Of a stretch of DNA of 64,000 nt, positions 833 to 50,600 are shown piece by piece. A program made the position numbers and the translations under genes. Every line of letters starts with the position of its first letter. The first letter of the stretch is position 1. Source of the stretch: Macrostomum lignano (taxonomy: Eukaryota); the NCBI GenBank assembly GCA_002269645.1, contig NIVC01001828.1, positions 1-64,000 of the forward strand, in the 5' to 3' direction. The notes beneath the pieces are model-generated. The model did no database searches. It was not told where the DNA came from and saw only the letters and a program-made list of their open reading frames with translations.

Positions 833-5741
<4,909 letters not shown>

Positions 5742-23075: not shown

Positions 23076-24739
23076 GACAGACTGAAGCGCAAGCATGAAA
23101 TTGTGATTGAATGGCATGTGAAGCTGTGAGTCCTCAGCTACAGAGGCAAACCGAGGCGAAGGAATTATCTATTAAAATCTAGAAACTACGAGTAGAAAAA
23201 CCCGCATATTTTGCTACTCAAAGTAGCAGAAAAAGAGTTATTTCACACTCTAACTAGCTAAATATTGCTTTAAATGGTGAGACGCTTGACAATGAAGTCA
23301 AGCCAGTCTTAATTTGCATCTAAGCTATTGCAATAAATTCAGAGAGAAAGCTCAATTGACTTTCTGCCTTGCGTCTGACCTAAAAAATGCGCCTCTTTGT
23401 CCGCTTGCATTTCTGCATTTTCAGTCTCAATCAAGCGGTCGCAGGTTGAATAGTGTCGAGTGTGGGAGAGGGCGAGTGGGGCTCAAGGCTCCGTTCGGAT
23501 TGTCTCAAATTACAGCAACATTCGGCCGCGTGTCAGGCTGGGCAGTCTTGCATTCGAAATTAGTTTGAATTCGAACTAATTGGTCGCCTCTGGCCCTCTT
23601 GATTTCCTGTAGCCTTTTGCAATGCTATTTTAGGATATTATAAGCATCATATTGTTGTCTGACTGTCTGAAACTTCAATAACACATTTTTAAATTAACAG
23701 CTTAACTAGCAGATTATATTATAAGTTCGATCGGTAACGCAGCACTCGACTAGCACAGCAACTGACTTGCTGGCAGATCTCGGTCGCAATCCTTGCCCAC
23801 CAGCCCCTGGCTGAAACTGCGCAGTCCCCAAAGTTGTTGTTGGTGCAGCGCCCTCTGTTTTCGTTAAAGCCGAATTGCTCTTCGCTACAAACCAGCCGAT
23901 TCCCAGGCAGCAGAAGCAGCAGCAGTAATTGAATACAGTAAAAAAAGAAGCAGAAAAAGTTTCAGACCCCCAAGTAAAGAAGTGAGAGGTGGAGAACCAG
24001 AGAAAAGCAGCACTTGCCCGCCGCGGAGAGCCCGAAAAGCTGTGCAAAACCCCCGTCTCCACCGGACTGGAACCAGCTGAACGGAAATGAAAGAAGAAAC
24101 AAAGCCAAGGAAGAAGAAGAAGAAGAAAACGCATATAAATAGGCGTCAGTTTTAGAGACGACCAGGCGAGAGCGGCGGCGGCGGAGGCGCGCATTCCGAG
24201 GACAGCTTGGCGAGCTGACTGTCTGCAGATGGTGAGAGCACCGGCTATAGTTGTAGAGCTGAACCCGAAGGGGAGCTGCTTGAACTGACACACCGCCTGA
24301 CAGCACTGTGTCATGGAGCTGCTCTCTTGCTGGTTCCTCTTCTGTCTTCAGGCCAACCCGCAGTTCTCTGATCCCAGTTCGCATGGTACAAATAAACTAC
24401 CTTTTGCATGATCAGCATGTTTAAAAATTGCCTTTTCGATTTGTCTTTTTTATTTGTGTGTAATTGAGAGGGGCGCAGATACAACTGGGAAAGGGAGGAA
24501 AATATTTACAGTATAGCAAGTGATTGTCACTAAAAAGTTAATCTCCTCGGGCATTATACGAGCGATAAGAAAGTGTTTGATTATTGAATAGGTTAGTGTA
24601 AAAGGTGACACCGCAGGTGCACTGCATGATTTAAAACAATTTTACATACACATGGAGCAATCCGCCATTAGCTTTGCTACATAATCTAAGTGAGTTACCA
24701 GTAGCACACAGCCGGAGGCTGAGAAAGATACATGAAAGC

Positions 24740-27700
24740 TCAAATGGCCCACCAGCGACATCCGTCGCCAGACATGGTCACTGTTGCCGCCTCGCCGTCG
24801 TCGCCTTCGCCTTCACCGTCGCTGTCCGGTCCACTAGAAAACTGGGCATCGGCTTCGTCTCTGCCCTTGTACTCAAAGCTGGCGCTTCTGTCTTCTTGTC
24901 TCTCACTGCCCGAGCTCCAGCTGCCAACAAATCCAGTTTCGATGCTCCCGGCTTTGCTGCTACCGACAAATCCTGCTGGATCCTTGTCTGATCCGTCTTG
25001 CATCTCGTTGCTGCTCGATTCTTTATTGCATCGCTCTTTGATCTTGCCGACATTGTCGTTGAGCTCACCAGTTGTGGATTGCTTGCCGCTGGCCAGGGTG
25101 ACTGCCGCGCTCTCTTCGTTGTCCAGCTCGGCCAGGAATTGCTCGACTTTGCTCCGGCCCAGAATGCGAGCGCAGTCAAGCGCCGTGAGGTCCCAGCGAT
25201 CGCGCAGGCGTCGGTCGACGCGGCAGACGCTGCAGAGGAACTGAACAGCGGCCAGGCGGCCCTCCGACGCGGCCACGTGTAGAGGGGTGCGGCTGTCGTA
25301 GTCACAGGAGTTCATGTCGTGGCCCTGTGACGGAGTGGACAGCACTGTCAATGTTAGCCTTCAGCCAAATTCCCCTCATGGAATTCCCTTCATGGAACTC
25401 CCACATGGAACTCCCACATGGAATTCCCCACATGGAATTCCCTTCATGAAATTTTCTTCATGGAATTCCCCTCATCGAATTCCCCTTATGGAATTCCCTA
25501 ATGGAATTCCTCTAATGGAACTCCCCTCACCGAATTCCCCTCACCGAATTCCCCTCACCGAATTCCCCTCACCGAATTCCCCTCACCGAATTCCCCTCAC
25601 CGAATCCCCCTCACCGAATTCCCCTCAACGAATTCCCCTCACCGAATTCCCCTCACCGAATTCCCCTCACCGAATTCCCCTCACCGAATTCCCCTCACCG
25701 AATTCCCCTCTCCGAATTCCCCTCACCGAATTCCCCTCTCCGAATTCCCCTCACCGAATTCCCCTCACCGAATTCCCCTCACAAAATTCCCCTCACAGAA
25801 TTCCCCTCACAGAATTCCCCTCACCGAATTCCCCTCACCGAATTCCCCTCACCGAATTCCCCTCACCGAATGCCGAATTCCCCTCACCGAATGCCGAATT
25901 CCCCTCACCGAATGCCGAATTCCCCTCACCGAATGCCGAATTCCCCTCACCGAATGCCGAATTCCCCTCACCGAATGCCGAATTCCCCTCACCGAATGCC
26001 GAATTCCCCTCACCGAATGCCGAATTCCCCATTCTTCACTTCTAGGCATACCCAGACTGAATCCCCCGCTAGCTCCTCACCGTCAAGTAGAACCGCCGCA
26101 GGCAGGCGATGTCGCCGTCTCTAGCCGCGTACAGCATGGTGGAGACAGCGTCGAACCTGGCTCTGCCCGAGTCGGCCAGCCGGCCAGTCGGGTCCAGCTT
26201 CCTGTTGTGCAGCAGCGAGTCGTACAGGTGAAAGCTGTACTGGCGCACCAGCAGCTCGCAGAAGTGCAGCGACCTGGCGGACACGCGGCCCTGCAGCAGC
26301 CGCGGGGAGTACAGGCAGAGGCCCATGACATTCGGCAGCACAGCCAAGAGGCAGCCGCTGACGCCCGCGGTGGCCGGTAAGCCGCATTTGAAGGCGAATC
26401 GGCCAGAGTGCCGGCCAAGCCCGCAGCTGTGCATCACCGACAGGGTGCTGCGGGTGGCAGCCGGGCTGAGCACCCGGTCCTCGGTCAGGGGGCAGACTCC
26501 GCCGTTAGCCAGGGCAGCCGCGATCAGGGCCCCGGCCTTGAATTGGAGAATTGGGGATCGGGTCTGCTTGACTCCATTGTGCTTGATTGGCCCATTCTTT
26601 GCACTCTCCACACCCCTAATTTCCAACTTCATTTTCCTCTTTGTCTTCCTCTCTGTCTCCCCCTCTTTGTCTCCCTACTCTCTCTCTCCCCTCTTTGTCT
26701 CCCTTTCTCTCTGTCTCCCACTCCGTCTCCCACTCTCTGTCTCCCACTCTCTGTCTCCCACTCTCTGTCTCCCACTCTCTGTCTCCCACTCTCTGTCTCC
26801 CCCTCTCTGTCTCCCACTCTCTGTCTCCCACTCTCTGTCTCCCCCTCTCTGTCTCCCACTCTCTGTCTCCCCCTCTCTGTCTCCCCCTCTCTGTCTCCCA
26901 CTCTCTGTCTCCCACTCTCTGTCTCCCACTCTCTGTCTCCCGCCTCACTCCACCTCACAACCTCTCGCCTCGTGTGTTATCTCCGGTAGTATTAGTGAAC
27001 TGATTTTAGAAATTTGGCGAATGCATTCTACACAAATTCGCCGAATAGGTAAATAAGTAGTCAAAACGAGCATGAGTTATATAATTTCTCTACGTTAGCA
27101 AAACCTAACAAAATCCGCACCTGACAGTCAATAGAGAAGGACGCCAACTGCAGGTGCAAATCCATGGCGTCTGTAGCCTGTGCACCGGGCGGGAAGGCGC
27201 CCAGCTCCATCAGGCGGTAAGCGGCAGCCCAGTTGTGATAATTGGCCTCCCGCTGCGACAGGTACGAGCCCGTGTGCACCGACACTGAGCCTCCGGCCAG
27301 CAGGCGGCTGTAGACACGGCACAGGGCGGAGAACCGAGCGGACAGCGGGTCCTGCGGCGAGCCGATCAAGGCGGCGGTGAGCAGCGCGCCGGAGCCCGTC
27401 AGCGGGTTGAACGGCTTGCCATCCGGACCGATCTCTAAGCCTTCGTGGTGTACACCTGTTGGATTCACCATTCTCTCATGCTGTCATTCTGTTGTAATTT
27501 TGCAAATCTGTAATGCTGACATTCTGTTATTCAGCCATTCTACCATCCTGCCATTCTGTCATTCTGCCATTCTGCCATTCTGCCATTCTGCCATTCTGCC
27601 ATTCTGCCATATTGCCATTTTGCCATTCGGCCATTTTGCCATTCTGCCATTTTGCTATTCTGTCACTCTGCTATTCTGCCATTCTGCCATTCTGCTATTT

Positions 27701-30293
27701 TGCCATTCTGCCATTTTTATATTTTTCAGTTTTCTATTCTGCCATTCTGCCATTTTGCCATTCTACCATTCTGCCATTCTGCCATTCTGCTATTTCTGCC
27801 ATTCTGCCATTCTGCCATATTGCCATTTTGCCATTCGGCCATTTTGCCATTCTGCCATTTTGCTATTCTGTCACTCTGCTATTCTGCCATTCTGCCATTC
27901 TGCTATTTTGCCATTCTGCCATTTTTATATTTTTCAGTTTTCTATTCTGCCATTCTGCCATTCTGCCATTCTGCTATTCTGCCTTTCTGCCATTCTGCCA
28001 TTCTGCCATTCTGCCATTCTGCCATTCGCCATTCTATCATTCTGCGATTCTGACATTCTGCGATTCTGCCATTCTGCCATTCTGCCATTCGCCATTCTAT
28101 CATTCTGCGATTCTGACATTCTGCGATTCTGCCATTCTGCCATTTTGCCATTCTTTCATGCCGTCATTCCGTCATTCTGCAGCAGAAATGAATGAGCAAT
28201 TGCTCACCAACTGGCTCATAGCCAACAAATTGGTGCACAACAGCCGGCCCCTTCTCCGTCAGCGCCACAGCATAGGTGATTGGCTGGCTGCAGTCCTGCA
28301 GGCAGAAGGCCGCTCGAGAATCGCCAAGCGACAGCCGCTGACCGTCCACGGTGCACAGCGAGATGCCCCACGAATCGGGGTCGGCCTGGGTGAGCTCTGG
28401 GGTCAGGCGGCTCACCTCACCGACTTTACACTCTTGCCGCGCTTGCCTGAGCGGGTGGATTAAGTGCATTATCGCTTGCTGGCCCAGTCACCGGAAGCTG
28501 CTGTCACAATGGAAGCTGCTGTCACAATGGAAGCTAGTGTCACAATGGAAGCTGCTGTCACAATGGAAGCTAGTGTCACAATGGAAGCTGCTGTCACAAT
28601 GGAAGCTGCTGTCACAGTGGAAGCTAGTGTCACAGTGGAAGCTAGTGTCACAATGGAAGCTGCTGTCACAATGGAAGCTGCTGTCACAGTGGAAGCTAGT
28701 GTCACAGTGGAAGCTAGTGTCACAATGGAAGCTGCTGTCACAATGGAAGCTTGTGTCACAATGGAAGCTAGTGTCACAGTGGAAGCTGCTGTCACAATGG
28801 AAGCTTGTGTCACAATGGAAGCTAGTGTCACAGTGGAAGCTGCTGTCACAATGGAAGCTTGTGTCACAATGGAAGCTAGTGTCCTGGTATCATACCGAAA
28901 GCTACGGTTTCAAGCCAGGGACCACTGTAGTATAACAGGACGAAAAACTAAAAAATCGTGTCCTGAAAAAATACACTGTGGAGATAGGGAAAATCGTTTT
29001 CTCATCACAACATTAACGATTGCACTTTCTCTGGGGCAGTGAAGATGACTATTTCTTAAATTTATCATGCACAGCATGTAAATCTGTTGCATTTTACTAT
29101 AAGGGGTTATAGACAAGTGGATAGGGTTTCGGACACATGACTGGAAGTTCGGGAGTTCGATTCCCGATCCCACTGGAACAATTCGTGTCCTTGAGTAAGA
29201 CGACCCTTAACTCTGCATTGCTTCAGTTCACCCAACTGTAAAATGGGTGCCAGCATTAGCTGGGGTAATTGAGGCTGTGTGTGGCGACCCCCCAGTCCTT
29301 GGACTGAACAGCCGTACGCAGCCTTCAGATGCGCCGCGCAATAGCTGCGGCTGAGCTGTCGGTTGCACATCTGGCCCAATTGGGACAGGTGTAATCAAAT
29401 AATGTCAGAAATTTTCACTACACAGCTACATAAAATACAACAGAGTAACATGTTTTGCATGCTTAGTTAAAAGAATGTTAATATTCAATTTCCCAGATCA
29501 AATGCAATCATTGATTATGTGATGAGAGAATGATTTTTCCCTATCTCCGCAGTGCATTTTTTCCACTGCTTGCTATCTGGGGGGTGCTTGCTATCTGGGG
29601 GGTGCTTGCTATCTGGGGGTGCTTGCTATCTGGGGGTGCTTGCTATCTGGGGGGGGGGGGGAGTGCTGGCTATCTTGGGGGTGCTTGCTATCTGCGGGAT
29701 GCTTGCTATCTTTTTGTGAAGGCTTTATTTTGTTGTGACCTTTTGTTACTATAGAAAGAAAGAGCTTTATAGCAAACATCTTTGTCCGTGACAATTTTAC
29801 TCGAATAAGGTGATTTATAATACTGAAGAAGGAATTTGTTCTTAAGAAAATGTGCTTTTTAATGGATTTGCATGAATAATTTTTTGCTCCTTGCTTATTG
29901 GGCGCCCCGAAGGGGGGCACTAGATTGCTAGTCAAATATTAAAAGCAACCCAACAACAATGCCCACTCACTCAAACAGCATCTCAATAGTCTGCGCAAAT
30001 CCGACAAAGTCGCGCACAATGAGCTCATTGCGCAGCACCTTGAGCAGAAAGACGCTGCCAGTGGCCGAGAAGATTCGCTCAACCGACTCTTTGCTGAAGG
30101 CGGGCTCGCCCTCATTGTCTGACATTGCGGCCAGCAGCTGCTGCAGGTTGGCCTTGATGCGCGGGTCCCGCTTGTCGATGCCCTCGGTGCGCAGCCAGGC
30201 GGTCAGCTTGGCGGCCCGGATCAGGCCGAGGTCCTCGGCGCTGTAGCGGACAGCCGAAGGCGCTGCTACCTGCGAGACAGTTTGAGTCTGCAT
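24740..30293 (-). CDS. GLS: Glutaminase (GLS/GLS2)-like protein, 645 aa, with EF-hand-like N-terminal bundle, glutaminase domain and ankyrin repeats; active site degenerate
   Basis: Exons on the complement: 29971-30293, 28208-28446, 27121-27455, 26081-26536, 24740-25324 (1938 nt, phases 2,1,0,0, all GT-AG). Recognisable motifs: WGISLCTVDGQR, HQFVGYEP, KPFNP, AALANGGVCPLT, MHSCG..SGRFAFKCGLPA, and the ankyrin DYDSRTPLHVAASEG...DRW. Confidence 0.93.
25365..26030. repeat. 14-bp (gaattcccctcacc) array grading into a 21-bp (+gaatgcc) array, GLS-like intron 4
   Basis: Direct reading; fills most of the intron 25325-26080. Confidence 0.95.
26640..26940. repeat. 14-bp pyrimidine-rich array (ctctctgtctccca), GLS-like intron 3
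   Basis: Direct reading. Confidence 0.9.
27490..28165. repeat. 8-bp (ctgccatt) degenerate array with an internal block duplication, GLS-like intron 2
   Basis: Direct reading. Confidence 0.9.
28493..28880. repeat. 18-bp minisatellite (ggaagctgctgtcacaat), GLS-like intron 1
   Basis: Direct reading. Confidence 0.95.
29103..29403 (+). mobile_element. tRNA-headed SINE, family 1, near full length
   Basis: A-box-like tatagacaagtgg and B-box gagttcgattccc, then a body gtgtccttgagtaagac...ctctgcattgcttcagttcaccc..ctgtaaaatggg and an AT-rich tail. Near-identical bodies occur at 33570 and 46323. Confidence 0.8.
29567..29705. repeat. Short 18-bp array (cttgctatctggggggtg)
   Basis: Direct reading. Confidence 0.8.
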
Positions 30294-30799
30294 TGCTCAG
30301 CTTGGGAGAGGAGAAGACAGTTCTGTGCTGTGTCTGTAAAACCGTGCCAGAAAATTGATTATATTCTCTTGAGACTGCGTTTGTTTATTGCGTAATGCAA
30401 ATATTAGCACCATCGCACCACGGCTGGGTGAGTGAGTTTCAATTTAAACTCAATTAATTGCGTGCAAAGCGCGATGAACCCTAGTTGGGCCCCCCCTGAG
30501 ATGTCTCTTTGATGCAATCTTACAAGAACACAAGAAGGTCATCAAAATTTTATAAGCGACGAAGTAAACCTTCGTGAAAGCTAATAACTTCAACGATTCA
30601 ATATAGAGAAACAGATTTGCTCAAAGTAGCCCCAGTAGCAACAAGATTACATCATAGCCAAGGCCTCAAAACCAACTATAACTTTAAACGCTGCATAGAA
30701 CGTGCCGATTCTCACGCAAAGACTGGGTAATTTTTCTAACTCTCCACAATGCCCCAATTTCATAATAATTTCGTCAGTAAAGCAATAAAGCTATTACAA

Positions 30800-30899: not shown

Positions 30900-31128
<229 letters not shown>

Positions 31129-44884: not shown

Positions 44885-47570
44885 TCAGCGCCTCTGTTGG
44901 TTCTGTACTAGAAGCTTGTTGATGAAGGACACGATGGCCGGCGCTGGCTGCTGCGGATCGAACTCGCAGGCAAGTACGCAGGTGTTCTCCGACGGGCCGA
45001 AGTGCCCGCCCACGCCGCCTACTGCACCGCCTTTCCGAGCTACAAAGCCGAATAGTCGGGGGCTCTTCAAGCCCCTCACTGACAGTTCCGGGTGGGCGAA
45101 TCTGGAATGGTTCGGGTGCAGGTGCTGCTTATTGTTGCTAGGCTTCACTTGCGTAATGGTGGAGAGAGATCGCAAAAAGAGTAGGAATGGGATGAATTGA
45201 GGAGAGAGTCAGGATGGCAGTAGGGAGTGGAGGAGATTCTGAGGATGGCAGTAGGGAGCGGAGGAGATTCTGAGGATGACAGTAGGGAGCGGAGGAGATT
45301 CTGAGGATGGCAGTAGGGAGCGGAGGAGATTCTGAGGATGGCAGTAGGGAGCGGAGGAGATTCTGAGGATGGCAGTAGGGAGCGGAGGAGATTCTGAGGA
45401 TGGCAGTAGGGAGCGGAGGAGATTCTGAGGATGACAGTAGGGAGCGGAGGAGATTCTGAGGATGGCAGTAGAGAGCGGAGGAGATTCTGAGGATGGCAGT
45501 AGGGAGCGGAGAGAGGTTCAGGGATGAAAGAAGGGAGCGGAAGAGATTCTCGGGAGTAAGGGAGATGATGGATTATATGGCGGTGAGATGCAATAGATCA
45601 AAGCAAGCTGATAGTGAAGTAGGCAGCACTGGAACGAAATTAGTGTAGCAAGAATGTACTAGATAATGGATATTGAAAGGATTAGATTTTAAAGCTCTTA
45701 CAAGCTGACTAATTAGACTACGGGATAATCCCTTAATCAGCTTTTCATATTATAACAAACAGGAGAATGAAACCCTCAGATAGAATTCTAACTGTTCTGA
45801 AAACTCACTTTGATGCTTCACCTACCTGCGATCCTGGTTGTCCAATCCGCAGTACAGAACGGACGCCAGCGGATAGTTGCGTCGGAAGAAAAGTTTCCGA
45901 TGATTGTCGGTCAGCGTGACGCCGTCCTGGCCAACTTTCAGCTGGCACTCGGCGGTGCGCAGCTGGGCCTGGCTGGACAGCGCGACGTCCACCGCTCGGG
46001 CGACGGCGTCCCCGCCGGACAGGGACTCAACGTCGACGCTGCCTACGTAGAGAACGTTGCAAGCTGGCGCAGGAAGGGAGGTGAGAGAGAAGGTTATCGA
46101 TGAGACAAAGAAGAATGGATGGTTCGTAAAGGCGATTCTACTAGCTGTGGTCTGTAAGGGCAAGCGTACACGTTTGGCGACAAGATAGTCATCTTTGTAT
46201 CTTTCTGTTGACGGAAACAATCGCAGGGACTTCAATACGTGTTTGAGACTGGCATTTTAACCCAATCAAGTCTTGACTGTGGTAAGGTTGGCATGGACAT
46301 CACCCAGGATTACTCCAGTGCAAGGGGTTGTAGCCTAGTGGATAGAACGTCGGACTCACGACTGGAAGGTCTTTGAGACACTTAACTCTGCATTGCTTCA
46401 GTTCACCCAGCTGTAAAATGGGTGCCAGCATTAGCTGGGGTAATTAAGGGTGTGTGCGTGGTGACCCCCCCCCCCAGTCCTTGGACTGAACAGATGCGTT
46501 GCGCAATAGCTGCGGCTGAGCTGTCGGTTGCACATCTGCCCATTAGGGCAGGTGTAATCAATTTTATTAATGACTCCAGTGCAATGTGGCAACTCAGTAT
46601 TTAGCTACTCAACCTACCAGCACTGCTCTGCAGCGGATGTCGGACCTCTACCGGAGCGCCTGCCGCGGTCTGTTCAACGCAGCCACCAGCACCACCGGTT
46701 GCTTGCGCCTGCGCAGCAACTCTGTCAGGCTGGTCGTACACCGCAGCCTCCGGCCGGGGCACAATCAGGCGGCAAGGCAGGGCCAGCTGGGTGACCGAGT
46801 GCTGCTGCACCAATGCGGCCAGTGTGGGGAAGATCGGTTCGTTGGCGCAGCCTTTGAGCCGCACGCCGCCCGAGGTTGGCTCGATGAGAAAATGCCGCAC
46901 CAGTTCAGCGCCGATGTCGTTGGACTTTGGCTGGATGCCTTTGGGAATCTGCGCAACCCTCACGGCCAGGCCGAATGCGCCCGGGAAGCTGTTGGAGTCG
47001 CGGACTACGAAAGTGCCCGGCTGGGCGTGCCGGAGCAGGTTGATAGCTACCGGTTGTTCGGGGCATTGTGAGCGGGTGATGGAAGTACTTTCAGAAACAA
47101 AAATCGGCAGATAAAACAGCAATAGAAACTTTGATAGAAGCTTACCTTCCTCCCGAGAGATGCGCGGTCGGTACCACAGCTTCATGCTGTCCTTCACCGA
47201 CATCTGGGCAGCCGCGGCAGACACGTAGCCCACGTTCGGCGAGTCCAAAGCGTCCACGCTGCCGTTGAGGCTGGACGGATGGGAGAAGTTGCTGGATGAC
47301 TGCTCGCCCGGAGACAGCGGCCCAGACGGGAAGGCCGGCGGCTGTTGCTGCTGCGATTGCTGGTGCTGCTGCGATGTAATTTGAACCACGGAAGATACCG
47401 TTGAGACTGGGGATAGCAGAACTGGCTCCTGCGATTGGCTGTTCAGAAACTTCTGCGGCTGCTGCTGAGTCTGGTACTGCTGACTGCGGTGCTGCTCTGA
47501 GTAGTAGCCAGTGAATCCGTTGCCTCCAGTGTCTAAGACGTCGCGGGTCTGTTGCACCTGCTGCTGCTGC

Positions 47571-47603
<33 letters not shown>

Positions 47604-50600
47604 CTGCTGTAGCCCCTGTTGCTGGCCATGGTGCCAGTAGCTGACGCTGAGGCCGGCGCTCGGACAACCTCAACAGTGTGCGGCTGCTGCAGTTCGATTG
47701 CTATTGGCTGCGGCTGCTGCTGCTGTGCTCCACCGCTAGCTGAATGATCCGCCTGCCGACTGAGGCTGTGGGTCTCGTACCGTCGGGTCGTCTGCTGTTG
47801 ATGCTGCTGCTGCTGCTGAGGGCTTTGAACGGCAGCTGCTGGCAGTGGCAGAGACGTCGGCGATTGAATTGTCGGATCGCCAAAGTCAGGCGGTACAGAG
47901 GACGAGTGAATGATTCTGCCGCCGCCACCGCCGGCTCCAGACATGTGAGTGAACTGTTGCTGCTGGACACCCACCTGGTGAATCTGCTGTCCCCTAGTGA
48001 GCGAATGCTGCTGATACTGCTGCGGCTGCAGGTGCACTTGGGCTGTTGTTGCCACAGCAACGCCGCCTGCCGATTGCGGCTGCGGAGTTGATGACCGCAG
48101 CGTAGCAACTGAAAATTTTCGACAGATAGAGAGACATCGTCAGCGGGGGAGCACAGCAGCTCTGTAGTTTGCGCATCTGATTAGCTCGTATCGCGACAAA
48201 CTACTCAGGTTCGATTCCGTGAGTGGCACATTAATTTGGTGCTTCAACATCCCAAGGCACAGAGAGTGTACATGCCTGACGATGTCAGGGTGCCTGCGTA
48301 CGCATCCGTGTTGGTGTTCATGCTCAGGGATGAGGGGAATGGGTGTGAGTACATGAGCCACCTCGCTGGCTGGGCGTCCACCAACTGCTGCGAACTAGCT
48401 AAACTTGAAAAGCATCGTCTTTTGCTAAATCCAAAATTAAATTAATTGTTGACTCACTCCGTCGCTGGCTAATATTCATCGCCTGCTGTTGCTTCGCAGT
48501 CTGCAATCCGCCTCCGACGACAGTCGCAGTTGGTAGATGCGGCGTCGATTGAGCCATGAGACGCCTGCCGCCGGCTGGGGTGGCTTCTTTTGGAGCCTCC
48601 AGATCGTGGATGCCCTTGCCGATGGGCTGCAGGGTGATGGTCTCCACCTCCTGGTAGACTTCGCCAGGCGTGTGCGTCACCGTGCGCTGCTGCAGGGTCT
48701 GTCAGATTTTTTATTAATCAATTAAAACTTTTTTTCGTTAAATGTTAATTATACTACTTTTCCTTGTTAATCAGCATCTTCAGCGTTTGATTAAAATAAC
48801 TCGGTAAAATTCCATTATTGGTTTTTAACTACTGGACTGTTGACTTAGAAAATTAACTTCAATCCTTCAGTGTTTGCTTGATGTGAAAGCAGACAGGGAC
48901 AAAAGGTACTTTGCCCCTTCTTATTAGAGACAGGGGTGGCTGTGTGCACCCTAGCGCACTTTAAGCGTCATTGCCCACAACCGGCGAGAGGCACACACTC
49001 ACACAGGAGTGTACAGGAGCCCTAACTTTATTTTTCTTTAGGCATGTACACTTCTCTGTGCCTTGGAGGTTGGCCCTTGAGGGTGTTAATTGCACGAGCA
49101 GAGCCAAGCTGAGATTCCTATTTAGCCCCAAATTAATTTGACTGCACTTGGAATCGAGCCTGGGCCGCCGACACGTGAGAGCGCCGCGCTAGACCACTGG
49201 GCTACGGCACCCCAACCTTGCCCCCTAGTAAATCAAAAAGTACTTTCTTTTAGGGACTGGCTTTCTTCATTCGTGGTAGCTTCAGTAAATTTCAAGCGAG
49301 AGAAACTATCAATATTTTCTCATGCCTTCATGTAGACCAACTACCAGATATACAAGATATGCGCACAGTTCGCCCTTCTGTTTCAGTAGCATGAATTTCT
49401 TGAGCTTTAGTGGCTCGGACGCCAACTGCGCAGCCATGAGAAACCAAGAAGTTTGCATCGCATGCCGGGCATTCCACTGCCCAATTATTCAAAGTCAAAT
49501 CCTGTTTATGGATGAAAAGTTCCTTCAGTAGCTGCTGCCACATAGGGGGAGATTAATGTCTGCTTTGGATGACTGAACTGCCCTCCGAAATAATGCGCAG
49601 TTTTGGCCACTTGCACACAAAACACGGCGGGCAATATCAGGCTGTGGAGGCTTGTACAGTACACTCACTAGCTAAAGGGTTCTCGTTTTTGATACTCGCA
49701 AAAAACACCGAAATATTGACATCTTGGATATAAGCACGACACGGCAGCATCGGAACTTAAAACAAAATGAAAAAAAATATTCGTCTCTAATAACGCGCAT
49801 ACTCTTAACTTACTACTTGTAGCGGATCAGTTCCCGCGTTTGACGAGTGCACTGGAATCTGCAGCTGAACGGGCCAGGGAAATCGGATGTTGAGTGGTAG
49901 GTTTTTCTTCTTTGGTGTTCAGGTTCACTATTTAACATTTGCGACCCTCTCCTGGCTATAGACTATCGCTCCACATGTAGCCATTGGCAGTACAGTCAGT
50001 TGCAGCAGAAGCTATAGTCTATGGTCTTAACCCCGGGGTCGGCTGAAGTGGCACGCCTAGGGAGGGGTATATGGAATCTGTGGGAAGGGTCTGTAGAACT
50101 GTGGCCTGTCTCACCCATAGACTACAGACATATTATCTAAGGCTTAGTCATAAGACCTTTCACTTGCAGCCTCACCCGTCGTTCCTGCTGATGCCGCGAA
50201 TGCGTGGTGGCTTCGCCAGCCGTTCGGTGCACCAGCGGCGTCTCGCTGGTGCGAAAGTGGCTCACGGAACTGGCCCGATGGCTGGCGCCAGTCATCTTGA
50301 TCTTCTGCCGGACCCGCTCCAGCGACCTCTCCAGTTCCTGCAGCTTGCTATCGAAGGTGTCCTCACCGCCTGCCTCCTGGCCAGAGGATTCAAAGTGCCT
50401 CCGGCTCTCTAAGTGCTGCTGCTGATGATGATGCTGCTGCTGCCTGCCTGCATGCGGCTGGAGAGTGCTGCTGGCCAGGTTGGATCTGCCTGCTGTGCGG
50501 CAGCGTTGATAGTAAGCTCAGAATGAATTCGTTATCACAGTTTAGTAAGACAATAAAGATATTCTAAACTATTGTACTTGGAACACAAAGAAGATGCCCA

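What the first reader, a model, noticed from the sequence alone, without database searches (positions are those of the whole stretch)
24740..30293. Intact glutaminase homologue with a systematically dismantled active site: candidate pseudo-glutaminase
Seen in the sequence: a clean 5-exon, 645-aa ORF with no stops or frameshifts that keeps the glutaminase fold motifs, the N-terminal helical bundle and well-conserved ankyrin repeats. The catalytic S-x-x-K motif reads CLQ-D-CS-Q-P (codons 28293-28295 and 28284-28286) instead of CLQ-S-CV-K-P. Against human GLS numbering (recalled, aligned by eye), the changes are Y249>L, S286>D, K289>Q, N335>G, E381>Q, Y414>H and Y466>G. The gating loop LRFNKLF reads VHHEGLE, while N388 and V484 are retained. 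Established knowledge: these residues are the nucleophile, general base and glutamine-binding set. Inference: loss focused on the active site with the scaffold preserved points to a selected non-catalytic role, such as a regulatory subunit in hetero-oligomers or filaments with true GLS, an ankyrin scaffold, or a sensor.
Basis: partly seen in the sequence, partly recalled or inferred. Interest (0 to 1): 0.82.

Follow-up and report, generated by a model that had tools for sequence, protein, structure and literature searches.

The report
Catalytically dead flatworm glutaminase paralogue
The flatworm Macrostomum lignano keeps an intact, transcribed copy of the enzyme glutaminase in which nearly every residue needed for catalysis has been replaced, so it most likely works as a non-enzymatic protein rather than as an enzyme.

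Summary
Window 24740-30293 (minus strand) holds a 5-exon, 645-aa gene with GT..AG at all four introns. It is Macrostomum lignano Mlig015753g1 (GenBank PAA63614.1), annotated only as "hypothetical protein"/"glutaminase".

They add more:
- the invariant K481-S482-G483 motif reads T-A-G
- S314V, F318H, N319E, H330F
- the D386-K396 tetramer salt bridge (now Y and M)
- the phosphate site K320/R387/Y394/K398 (now G/H/R/L)

The fold is kept (AlphaFold pLDDT >=90 for 393 residues, TM 0.93 to human GAC), and so are all ten family-invariant ankyrin positions.

Three genomic copies carry the identical dead site. All are intact, with dN/dS 0.2-0.3, 8 non-synonymous to 10 synonymous changes (p=0.005) and no coding indels, while the flanks are indel-rich. 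The genome also encodes a canonical GLS that keeps 70/70 invariant positions.

No orthologue was found in any other species. The role is untested. The canonical tetramer or filament partnership looks disfavoured.

In passing: teleost "Glsl" proteins and many protist tandem-domain glutaminases are independently dead. I found no paper describing GLS-family pseudoenzymes.

The parts
29971..30293 (-). Exon 1 (codons 1-107 plus 2 nt). It holds the start ATG at 30293-30291 and the N-terminal helical (EF-hand_14-like) domain, residues ~17-93.
   Evidence: model, GTGAGT donor; EF-hand_14 E=3.2e-4, below the Pfam cutoff; helices 19-113, pLDDT 77-98.
30294..30312 (-). 5' boundary: a polypyrimidine tract plus AG acceptor (TCTTCTCCTCTCCCAAG|CTGAGCAATG), with an in-frame TGA two codons upstream of the ATG. 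No N-terminal extension or presequence can be added.
   Evidence: The acceptor and the in-frame TGA are present in g1, g2 and g3; g3's polypyrimidine tract is 3 nt shorter (a CTC deletion). Reading the AG as a trans-splice or 5'UTR acceptor is inference.
28208..28446 (-). Exon 2: start of the glutaminase domain, including the degenerate S-x-x-K motif.
28284..28295 (-). The former catalytic dyad motif reads D159-C-S-Q162 (GAC TGC AGC CAG) instead of S286-C-V-K289.
   Evidence: Identical in g2 and g3. Role of S286/K289: PMC4929687.
28404..28406 (-). L122 at the 'lid' Tyr249 position.
   Evidence: Y249 is not invariant (Cys in the canonical M. lignano GLS).
27121..27455 (-). Exon 3: the middle of the glutaminase domain. 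It carries H191-E192-G193 (F318/N319/K320), F203 (H330), G208 (N335), Q255 (E381), Y260-H261 (D386/R387), retained N262 (N388), R268 (Y394), M270 (K396), L272 (K398) and H288 (Y414).
   Evidence: Residue roles: PMC4929687, PMC9949068, PMC8800119.
27202..27240 (-). Dimer-dimer interface and phosphate-site helix. D386Y, R387H, Y394R, K396M and K398L mean the tetramer salt bridge and the anion-activator site are both lost.
26081..26536 (-). Exon 4: the end of the glutaminase domain, the linker and the first ankyrin repeat. It carries G340 (Y466), T355-A356-G357 (K481-S482-G483), retained V358 (V484), and L380/R383/V384/S388 (D506/G509/N510/G514).
26363..26371 (-). The invariant K-S-G motif (78/78 canonical sequences) is replaced by T-A-G.
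   Evidence: Equating it with the K(T/S)G motif of the serine beta-lactamase-like fold is my inference.
24740..25324 (-). Exon 5: the remaining ankyrin repeats (to residue ~518), then a 109-residue Gly/Ser/Asp/Glu-rich tail (residues 537-645, window 25069-24743, net charge -13, predicted disordered). Stop TGA at 24742-24740.
25124..26134 (-). Ankyrin-repeat region (residues 434-518, interrupted by intron 4). All 10 family-invariant columns of this region are retained.
   Evidence: Ank_2 E=1.1e-9; columns 541-619 all kept; pLDDT >90.

Best explanation
This is a pseudoenzyme: a transcribed, selectively maintained paralogue of the GLS-type glutaminase of the flatworm Macrostomum lignano (gene Mlig015753, three near-identical genomic copies; the window holds copy g1). 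It keeps the three-domain fold (N-terminal helical domain, beta-lactamase-like glutaminase domain, ankyrin repeats) but can no longer hydrolyse glutamine.

Shown:
- The nucleophile Ser, the general-base Lys, the proton-relay Tyr466 and the K-S-G motif are replaced.
- Four of the side chains that hold the substrate's alpha-amino and alpha-carboxylate groups are replaced.
- The residues that couple catalysis to phosphate binding and to dimer-to-tetramer assembly are also replaced.
- The structural core and the ankyrin repeats are conserved, and the coding sequence is under purifying selection.

Inferred: the protein acts by binding rather than by catalysis. It would use the conserved ankyrin module and folded core, plus a new acidic, disordered 109-residue tail, as an interaction platform. 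This is analogous to the catalysis-independent, C-terminus-mediated binding of Rac1 by human GLS2. Because the canonical inter-dimer salt bridge is gone, it probably does not enter canonical GLS tetramers or filaments. If it contacts the active paralogue at all, it would be through the dimer interface, giving a heterodimer that cannot tetramerise.
For: - Gene model and identity with the RNA-seq-derived GenBank model.
- Full-length Pfam Glutaminase plus Ank.
- E~1e-114 to human GLS/GLS2 with residue-level alignment.
- Catalytic string LQDQGQNHGVG against YQSKNENYYVG in 60 canonical proteins.
- 50/70 invariant columns kept, against 70/70 for the canonical M. lignano paralogue.
- Further losses (S314, F318, N319, H330, D386, R387, K396, K481, S482, D506, G509, N510, G514).
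- Losses cluster next to ligand-contact residues (p=0.008), and all 10 invariant ankyrin columns are kept.
- Ala mutants of Y249, S286, K289 and Y466 show significantly reduced activity in human KGA: PMC4929687.
- D386-K396 hold the tetramer together: PMC8800119.
- The phosphate site is K320/R387/Y394/K398: PMC9949068.
- AlphaFold model is confident for the three domains, with a disordered tail.
- TM 0.93 and rmsd ~1.6 A to human GAC.
- Three intact copies with identical dead sites and splice sites, dN/dS 0.20-0.29.
- N:S = 8:10, p=0.005; no coding indels against 35-50 gap openings per 2-3 kb of flank.
- Precedent for a catalysis-independent role of the ankyrin-containing C-terminus: PMC4749555.
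Against: - No biochemical assay; inactivity is inferred from residues.
- The selection signal rests on only 18 substitutions among very young copies (dS 0.01-0.02). The p-value rises to 0.02-0.06 if the neutral non-synonymous fraction is 0.70-0.65. Part of the flank indel excess may reflect tandem repeats or long-read assembly errors.
- No orthologue in another species was found, so long-term constraint is argued only from an intact ORF at ~60% divergence.
- No tissue or expression-level data were found.
- No binding partner is known. The interaction-platform mechanism is inference by analogy.
Confidence: 0.65

Rival explanations
1. Regulatory partner of the active glutaminase. The dead subunit heterodimerises with canonical M. 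lignano GLS. Because it lacks the inter-dimer salt bridge and phosphate site, it caps or blocks tetramer and filament assembly and so damps glutaminase activity. This overlaps with the best explanation's fallback option.
For: GLS activity requires the dimer-to-tetramer-to-filament transition (PMC9949068; PMC8800119). The glutaminase-domain core is still conserved and confidently folded, which argues that the domain itself is used. Several tandem-domain protist glutaminases pair one intact S-x-x-K domain with one degenerate domain, so live and dead GLS domains recurrently sit side by side.
Against: Conservation of the dimer interface could not be tested: no coordinates or multimer prediction were available. 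There is no N-terminal extension for a mitochondrial presequence, although the canonical M. lignano GLS N-terminus is not obviously a presequence either. There is no co-expression or interaction evidence.
Confidence: 0.15
2. Repurposed pocket. The protein still binds a small molecule (glutamine, glutamate or something new) and acts as a sensor, or catalyses a different reaction using new residues such as Asp159 or His288.
For: Q285, N388, V484, G483, G486 and the P313/G315/N331/P332 framework of the pocket are retained. The nucleophile position carries an acidic residue here (D), in the fish clade (E/D) and in one Logan-assembly protein of unknown source organism (E). That could be a convergent, functional replacement.
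Against: The residues that hold the alpha-amino group (E381) and alpha-carboxylate (N335, Y414) and the hydrophobic cage (Y249, Y414, Y466) are all changed. No alternative catalytic constellation is evident. Second-shell invariant residues are also lost, which looks like relaxation rather than retuning.
Confidence: 0.12
3. Non-functional duplicate on its way to becoming a pseudogene. It is still intact and transcribed only because too little time has passed.
For: The three copies are very young relative to each other (dS 0.01-0.02). No orthologue was found elsewhere. No functional data exist.
Against: The lineage is ~60% diverged from every active glutaminase, yet it keeps a 645-codon ORF, four GT..AG introns, a full-length Pfam match and 71% of family-invariant columns, including 10/10 in the ankyrin region. 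Many catalytic replacements need two or three nucleotide changes, so the loss is old. The copies show dN/dS 0.2-0.3 and zero coding indels in an indel-rich neighbourhood.
Confidence: 0.06
4. Assembly or annotation artefact: sequencing errors at the catalytic codons, or a mis-spliced model.
For: None found. Two older truncated or frameshifted UniProt models of the same gene exist (P0002, P0124).
Against: Three independent contigs (NIVC01001828, NIVC01000640, NIVC01000897) carry identical codons at all 28 inspected positions. Splice sites are canonical and identical. More than 20 separate substitutions would be required.
Confidence: 0.02

Closest known systems
Animal GLS/GLS2 (kidney-type and liver-type mitochondrial glutaminase; Pfam PF04960 + EF-hand_14 + ankyrin repeats)
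   Same: Same three-domain architecture. 38-41% identity over ~500 residues (E~1e-114). Predicted structure superposes at TM 0.93 and rmsd ~1.6 A on human GAC. Keeps 50/70 family-invariant columns and all invariant ankyrin columns.
   Different: Lacks the S-x-x-K dyad, Tyr466, the K-S-G motif, N335/E381/Y414, the D386-K396 tetramer salt bridge and the phosphate-site residues. Has a new 109-residue acidic disordered tail. Has no N-terminal extension. Its four introns are at non-ancestral positions.
Canonical M. lignano glutaminase (Mlig006689g1/g2, Mlig026033g1; PAA75899.1)
   Same: Same genome and same architecture. 39-41% overall identity (BLASTP); in the MAFFT alignment 45% in the glutaminase domain and 43% in the ankyrin region.
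   Different: The canonical gene keeps 70/70 invariant columns and every catalytic residue except Y249C. It has one intron, where the window gene has four, and none is shared.
Teleost 'glutaminase liver isoform, mitochondrial'-annotated clade that includes a Danio rerio protein (probably zebrafish glsl)
   Same: Also a full-length GLS homologue lacking the catalytic set (S286E/D, K289W, N335E, E381S, Y414M/L, Y466K/N) and D386/K396. It shares 11 of the lost invariant columns with the flatworm protein (expected 7.1, p=0.033) and has an acidic residue at the nucleophile position.
   Different: Independent origin is likely. The replacement residues differ. The window protein is more distant from this clade (1.36) than from canonical GLS (1.08-1.18). 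The NJ grouping has only 42% bootstrap and joins two long branches. The fish gene keeps ~11 ancestral intron positions that the flatworm gene lacks. The literature treats glsl only as an unclassified 'novel Ensembl prediction' expressed in the swim bladder (PMC6197330).
Catalysis-independent functions of human GLS2 (Rac1-GDP binding through C-terminal residues 464-602)
   Same: Shows that the ankyrin-containing C-terminal module of this family can act as a protein-binding regulator without glutaminase activity (PMC4749555).
   Different: GLS2 is still an active enzyme. No Rac-type partner or any other partner is known for the flatworm protein. This is an analogy, not a test.
Pseudoenzyme paralogues that regulate their active relatives (e.g. 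plant PDX1.2, viral pseudo-GATs)
   Same: The general pattern of a dead paralogue retained beside a live one (papers listed).
   Different: Those belong to unrelated folds. No paper in the searched library describes a PF04960/GLS-family pseudoenzyme.

Membership tests
GLS-type glutaminase (PF04960, EC 3.5.1.2) | Glutaminase (serine beta-lactamase-like) domain present at full length | tested here: met
   Pfam PF04960 1-286/286, 238 bits. Foldseek TM 0.93 to human GAC.
GLS-type glutaminase (PF04960, EC 3.5.1.2) | Catalytic dyad Ser286-x-x-Lys289 | tested here: not met
   Reads D159-C-S-Q162 in all three copies. The dyad's role is given in PMC4929687.
GLS-type glutaminase (PF04960, EC 3.5.1.2) | Tyr466 (proton relay) and the invariant K481-S482-G483 motif | tested here: not met
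   G340 and T355-A356-G357. K481 and S482 are 78/78 invariant in canonical sequences.
GLS-type glutaminase (PF04960, EC 3.5.1.2) | Substrate-binding set Y249, Q285, N335, E381, N388, Y414, V484 | tested here: not met
   Only Q285, N388 and V484 are kept. L, G, Q and H stand at 249, 335, 381 and 414.
GLS-type glutaminase (PF04960, EC 3.5.1.2) | Dimer-dimer salt bridge D386-K/R396 and anion-activator site (R387, Y394, K320, K398) | tested here: not met
   Y260, M270, H261, R268, G193, L272. Roles from PMC8800119 and PMC9949068. K320, Y394 and K398 are variable among canonical enzymes, so only D386, R387 and K/R396 are diagnostic.
GLS-type glutaminase (PF04960, EC 3.5.1.2) | Animal architecture: N-terminal helical domain + glutaminase + C-terminal ankyrin repeats | tested here: met
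GLS-type glutaminase (PF04960, EC 3.5.1.2) | Glutamine hydrolysis measured | not testable with these tools
   Needs a recombinant protein assay.
Pseudoenzyme | Clear homologue of an active enzyme family, lacking residues essential for catalysis | tested here: met
Pseudoenzyme | Intact gene under purifying selection (not a pseudogene) | tested here: met
   Three intact copies, dN/dS 0.20-0.29, N:S = 8:10 (p=0.005), no coding indels. Power is limited to 18 substitutions. There are no cross-species data.
Pseudoenzyme | Expressed as mRNA/protein | tested here: inconclusive
   The GenBank model, identical to mine, derives from an RNA-seq-guided transcript assembly (PMC5730564). I found no read-level, tissue-level or protein-level data.
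Teleost Glsl-like dead-glutaminase clade | Shared descent: same replacements, shared gene structure, supported monophyly | tested here: not met
   D/Q against E/W at the dyad. No shared intron positions. 42% bootstrap, with a larger distance than to canonical GLS.
Processed pseudogene / retrocopy | Intron-less copy with a disabled ORF | tested here: not met
   Four spliceosomal introns and an intact ORF. An ancient retrocopy that later gained introns cannot be excluded, since no intron is at an ancestral position.

The most novel reading that the evidence does not exclude
Dead glutaminases may be a recurrent, unrecognised class of regulators. Independent lineages have each kept a full-length GLS fold while discarding the same catalytic and tetramer-interface residues: this flatworm gene, the teleost-wide Glsl-like clade, and the second domains of protist tandem glutaminases. 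They would function as non-catalytic partners that set the oligomeric state, and hence the activity, of active glutaminase, or as glutaminase-derived ankyrin scaffolds with a conserved new function.
Probability: 0.2. Interest if true: 0.7.

Novelty: new variant of a known kind. Interest (0 to 1): 0.5.

Why it matters
GLS and GLS2 are heavily studied because of cancer metabolism, neurotransmitter glutamate and filament-coupled catalysis. I found no paper describing a naturally occurring, selectively maintained dead member of this family.

A natural protein has removed the nucleophile, the base, the substrate cage, the phosphate site and the inter-dimer salt bridge, while keeping the fold and the ankyrin repeats. 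That makes it a ready-made probe for what the scaffold does apart from catalysis. M. lignano has transgenesis and published loss-of-function studies, so the question is testable.

Databases currently name these proteins "glutaminase". That would inflate metabolic reconstructions for flatworms and, through the fish clade, for teleosts.

Tried and rejected
- **Orthologue search.** Neither the 5.8-billion-protein library nor the 1.84-billion representative library holds anything between ~42% and 94% identity. Cross-species dN/dS could not be done.
- **Expression look-ups.** "Mlig015753" appears in no full text and in none of the held supplements of four M. lignano transcriptome papers.
- **Phylogenetic placement.** A neighbour-joining tree with 200 bootstraps is unresolved. 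The grouping with the fish dead clade has 42% support and looks like long-branch attraction. A shared-rare-residue count was confounded by taxon sampling.
- **Intron positions as evidence of origin.** No intron is shared with the canonical paralogue or with ancestral animal positions. This rules out a recent DNA-level copy of the present canonical gene structure but does not date the duplication.
- **3-D distance test of where losses sit.** Model coordinates are not exposed to the sandbox, so I used sequence proximity instead.
- **Intron divergence as a neutral yardstick.** It is unreliable because the introns are dominated by minisatellites. I used flanks and indel counts instead.
- **tRNA-like stretch in intron 1.** There is no tRNA and no Rfam match.
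- **Logan protein P0097 with a dead site.** It comes from a compact, intron-less contig and is not a flatworm relative.
- **Literature search for the mouse D391K dimer mutant.** It found nothing. The D386-K396 role was confirmed from PMC8800119 instead.

Full report
**What is there**

Reading the minus strand of window 24500-30600 and splicing five exons gives a 1938-nt CDS. The exons are 30293-29971, 28446-28208, 27455-27121, 26536-26081 and 25324-24740. All four introns have GT..AG boundaries. The product is 645 aa with a single terminal stop.

An in-frame TGA sits two codons upstream of the ATG, just after a polypyrimidine-AG acceptor. The protein therefore cannot have a longer N-terminus.

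The product is residue-for-residue GenBank PAA63614.1, "hypothetical protein BOX15_Mlig015753g1" of the free-living flatworm Macrostomum lignano. That gene's record coordinates on contig NIVC01001828.1 equal the window coordinates. GenBank models of this assembly come from a genome-guided RNA-seq transcript assembly (PMC5730564). The five-exon structure therefore has indirect transcript support. I could find no read-level or tissue-level data.

**Checking the observation**

Pfam matches the whole Glutaminase model (PF04960, 1-286/286, E=1.4e-70) and ankyrin repeats. It gives a sub-threshold EF-hand_14 match at the N-terminus. The best solved relatives are human GLS and GLS2 at E~1e-114.

| Human residue | Window residue | Window coordinates |
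|---|---|---|
| Y249 | L | 28406-28404 |
| S286 | D (GAC) | 28295-28293 |
| K289 | Q (CAG) | 28286-28284 |
| N335 | G | 27396-27394 |
| E381 | Q | 27255-27253 |
| Y414 | H | 27156-27154 |
| Y466 | G | 26416-26414 |

The roles of these residues are documented for human KGA. S286/K289 form the dyad, Y466 supports proton transfer, and the rest bind substrate. Ala mutants of Y249, S286, K289 and Y466 show significantly reduced activity (PMC4929687).

Two refinements:
- Y249 is not invariant. The active M. lignano enzyme has Cys there.
- The "gating loop" 316-322 varies among active enzymes. Only S314, G315, F/Y318 and N319 are conserved, and S314, F318 and N319 are lost here.

Among 70 columns that are >=95% invariant in 78 canonical sequences, the window protein keeps 50. 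The canonical M. lignano paralogue keeps 70. Additional losses are:
- The K481-S482-G483 motif (78/78 invariant) now reads T-A-G. I take this to be the K(T/S)G motif of the serine beta-lactamase-like fold, which is my inference.
- H330F.
- The invariant D506/G509/N510/G514 loop.
- D386Y, R387H and K396M.

D386-K396 are the four salt bridges that hold the two dimers of the tetramer together, and D386A impairs tetramer formation (PMC8800119). K320, R387, Y394 and K398 bind the activating phosphate, and F318 with Y249 locks the substrate in (PMC9949068). These positions read G, H, R, L, H and L in the window protein.

The losses are not random:
- 5 of 8 invariant ligand-contact columns are lost, against 15 of 62 others (p=0.038).
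- 13 of 20 lost columns lie within five residues of a contact residue, against 15 of 50 retained columns (p=0.008).
- All ten invariant columns of the linker and ankyrin region are retained.

Identity to human GLS by domain, with the canonical M. lignano paralogue's identity to human GLS as the baseline:

| Domain | Window protein | Canonical paralogue (baseline) |
|---|---|---|
| Ankyrin region | 44% | 51% |
| Glutaminase domain | 41% | 58% |
| N-terminal domain | 18% | 30% |

Relative to that baseline, the ankyrin region is the best preserved.

**Fold**

An AlphaFold2 model of copy g2 (99% identical, same dead site), built with a 64-sequence alignment, has mean pLDDT 80.5. It has 393 residues at pLDDT >=90 across all three domains. 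Residues 537-645 are below 50, which marks a Gly/Ser/Asp/Glu-rich tail of net charge -13. Foldseek superposes the model on human GAC at TM 0.93 (target-normalised) and rmsd ~1.6 A over ~399 columns.

**Not an artefact, not a decaying pseudogene**

The assembly holds three copies (g1 is the window, g2 is L001, g3 is L003). They sit in the same neighbourhood, with a gene carrying a faint MFS_1 Pfam hit upstream in all three and a ~650-aa gene downstream in g2 and g3. All three are intact, share splice sites and carry identical residues at all 28 inspected positions.

- Pairwise dN/dS is 0.20-0.29.
- The 18 unique changes split 8 non-synonymous to 10 synonymous, against a neutral ~3:1. This gives binomial p=0.005, rising to 0.02 if the neutral fraction is 0.70.
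- The CDS has no indel in any copy. The flanks carry 18-50 gap openings per ~1.7-3 kb aligned, which predicts 21-49 in the CDS.
- CDS mismatch is 0.4-0.9%, against 1.5-4.8% in the flanks.

These copies are very young (dS 0.01-0.02), so statistical power is limited. Some flank indels may reflect repeats or long-read errors.

The stronger argument for old constraint is the long branch. The protein is ~60% diverged from every active glutaminase, yet it keeps the ORF, the introns, a full-length domain match and 71% of invariant columns. Many catalytic replacements also need two or three nucleotide changes.

**Origin**

No orthologue exists between ~42% and 94% identity in either protein library.

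A neighbour-joining tree does not resolve the position. The grouping with the fish dead clade has 42% bootstrap. The window protein is further from that clade (1.36) than from canonical GLS (1.08-1.18).

Gene structure is informative in one respect. A Takifugu dead-clade gene (20 introns) shares about 11 intron positions and phases with scallop GLS, so those positions are ancestral. None of the window gene's four introns lies at any of them, and neither does the single intron of the canonical M. lignano gene. The two M. lignano genes share no intron. The gene is therefore not a retrocopy in its present form, and not a recent DNA copy of the present canonical gene structure.

**How it most likely works**

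Shown:
- The catalytic, substrate-binding, phosphate-activation and tetramer-bridge residues are gone.
- The fold and the ankyrin repeats are kept.
- The gene is constrained.

Inferred: the protein acts by binding. The family offers a precedent. The ankyrin-containing C-terminus of human GLS2 binds Rac1-GDP and suppresses its activation independently of catalysis (PMC4749555).

Because D386 and K396 are both lost, entry into canonical tetramers or filaments is unlikely. A heterodimer with active GLS that cannot tetramerise remains possible and would be inhibitory (rival A). A retuned ligand pocket (rival B) is less likely, because the alpha-amino and alpha-carboxylate ligands are all replaced.

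**Comparison and novelty**

The protein belongs to the GLS homology family but fails the family's catalytic membership tests. It meets the operational definition of a pseudoenzyme, with expression supported only indirectly.

I found no paper describing a GLS-family pseudoenzyme. Databases call this protein "glutaminase" or "hypothetical protein".

It is not unique in kind:
- About 35 teleost proteins annotated "glutaminase liver isoform, mitochondrial" are also dead. They span Clupeiformes to Percomorpha and include a Danio rerio member, probably glsl. They carry S286E/D and K289W among other replacements, and have also lost D386/K396. The literature notes glsl only as an unclassified prediction expressed in the swim bladder (PMC6197330).
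- Several protist tandem-domain glutaminases pair a live domain with a dead one.

The flatworm and fish lineages lose overlapping sets of invariant columns (11 against 7.1 expected, p=0.033). This is what one expects if those columns serve catalysis only.

**Verdict**

It extends to the K-S-G motif, the tetramer bridge and the phosphate site. It is a clean, previously undescribed dead variant of a well-known enzyme family in a genetically tractable flatworm. Its function is unknown and it has no known orthologues. Interest is moderate (0.5).

Noticed in passing
Proteins P0079-P0120; Takifugu locus L006:501-5754: About 35 teleost proteins annotated 'glutaminase liver isoform, mitochondrial' lack the whole catalytic set (S286E/D, K289W, N335E, E381S, N388L, Y414M/L, Y466K/N, V484S) and D386/K396. 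The species include Coilia, Chanos, cyprinids including Danio rerio, catfishes, Astyanax, Takifugu, Thunnus, Sebastes and Betta. The Takifugu gene keeps ~11 ancestral intron positions. This looks like a teleost-wide pseudo-glutaminase, probably zebrafish glsl, that databases mis-name as an active enzyme.
   Followed up: partly
Proteins P0003, P0129, P0133, P0136, P0149, P0156, P0190, P0204: Many ~900-1300-aa tandem-domain glutaminases, apparently protist, pair one domain with an intact S-x-x-K motif and one degenerate domain (e.g. QAIAN, QAVAS, QHCAN). In P0003 the dead domain keeps most substrate-binding residues. This was detected with a crude regex, and some hits are spurious.
   Followed up: partly
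window 25368-26030, 26649-26941, 27516-28180, 28493-28883, 29567-29711: Each of the gene's four introns is largely filled by a different minisatellite, with periods of 14/21, 14, 8, and 18/18 nt. Intron lengths differ between the three copies (intron 1: 1524, 3246 and 1627 nt). Exons are GC-rich islands between these arrays.
   Followed up: partly
window 24740-30293 compared with L004, L006, L007: None of the four introns of the dead gene, nor the single intron of the canonical M. lignano GLS gene, lies at an intron position shared by scallop and pufferfish glutaminase genes. Each is 5-12 codons away from an ancestral site. This suggests complete intron turnover of glutaminase genes in this lineage.
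   Followed up: partly
window 24740-30293 compared with L001 and L003: 16 of the 18 substitutions among the three copies fall in codons 4-282. Exons 4 and 5 (1041 nt) differ at two sites in g2 and at none in g3, and intron 3 of g1 and g3 differs by 0.3%. Possibly there has been recent gene conversion or uneven coalescence along the locus.
   Followed up: no
window 29100-29290 (minus strand, intron 1): A stretch resembles a tRNA T-arm (GGGATCGGGAATCGAACTCCCGAAC at 29147-29171). ARAGORN and Rfam find nothing. It occurs once in the window and is also present in intron 1 of copy g2, but not exactly in g3. It may be a degenerate tRNA-derived element.
   Followed up: partly
window 30938-31075: A perfect (TAG)46 microsatellite lies ~650 bp upstream of the gene's start codon.
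   Followed up: no
Proteins P0007/P0009 (canonical M. lignano GLS): The otherwise fully canonical M. lignano glutaminase has Cys at the 'lid' Tyr249 position and Ser at K320. In human GAC, the K320A substitution gives a phosphate-independent enzyme.
   Followed up: no
window 46601-48055 (-) and 1365-3548 (+): Long ORFs elsewhere in the window. One has an SH2 domain (E=7e-7). One has only weak coiled-coil-type matches (Sec10_N, Laminin_I). A gene whose product has only a faint MFS_1 Pfam hit lies upstream of the dead glutaminase in all three copies.
   Followed up: no
Proteins P0002, P0123, P0124 (UniProt A0A1I8J099, A0A1I8HT76, A0A1I8GQV1): Older UniProt models of the same gene are truncated and contain frameshifted or intron-read-through stretches. 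They are mis-models, not additional paralogues.
   Followed up: yes
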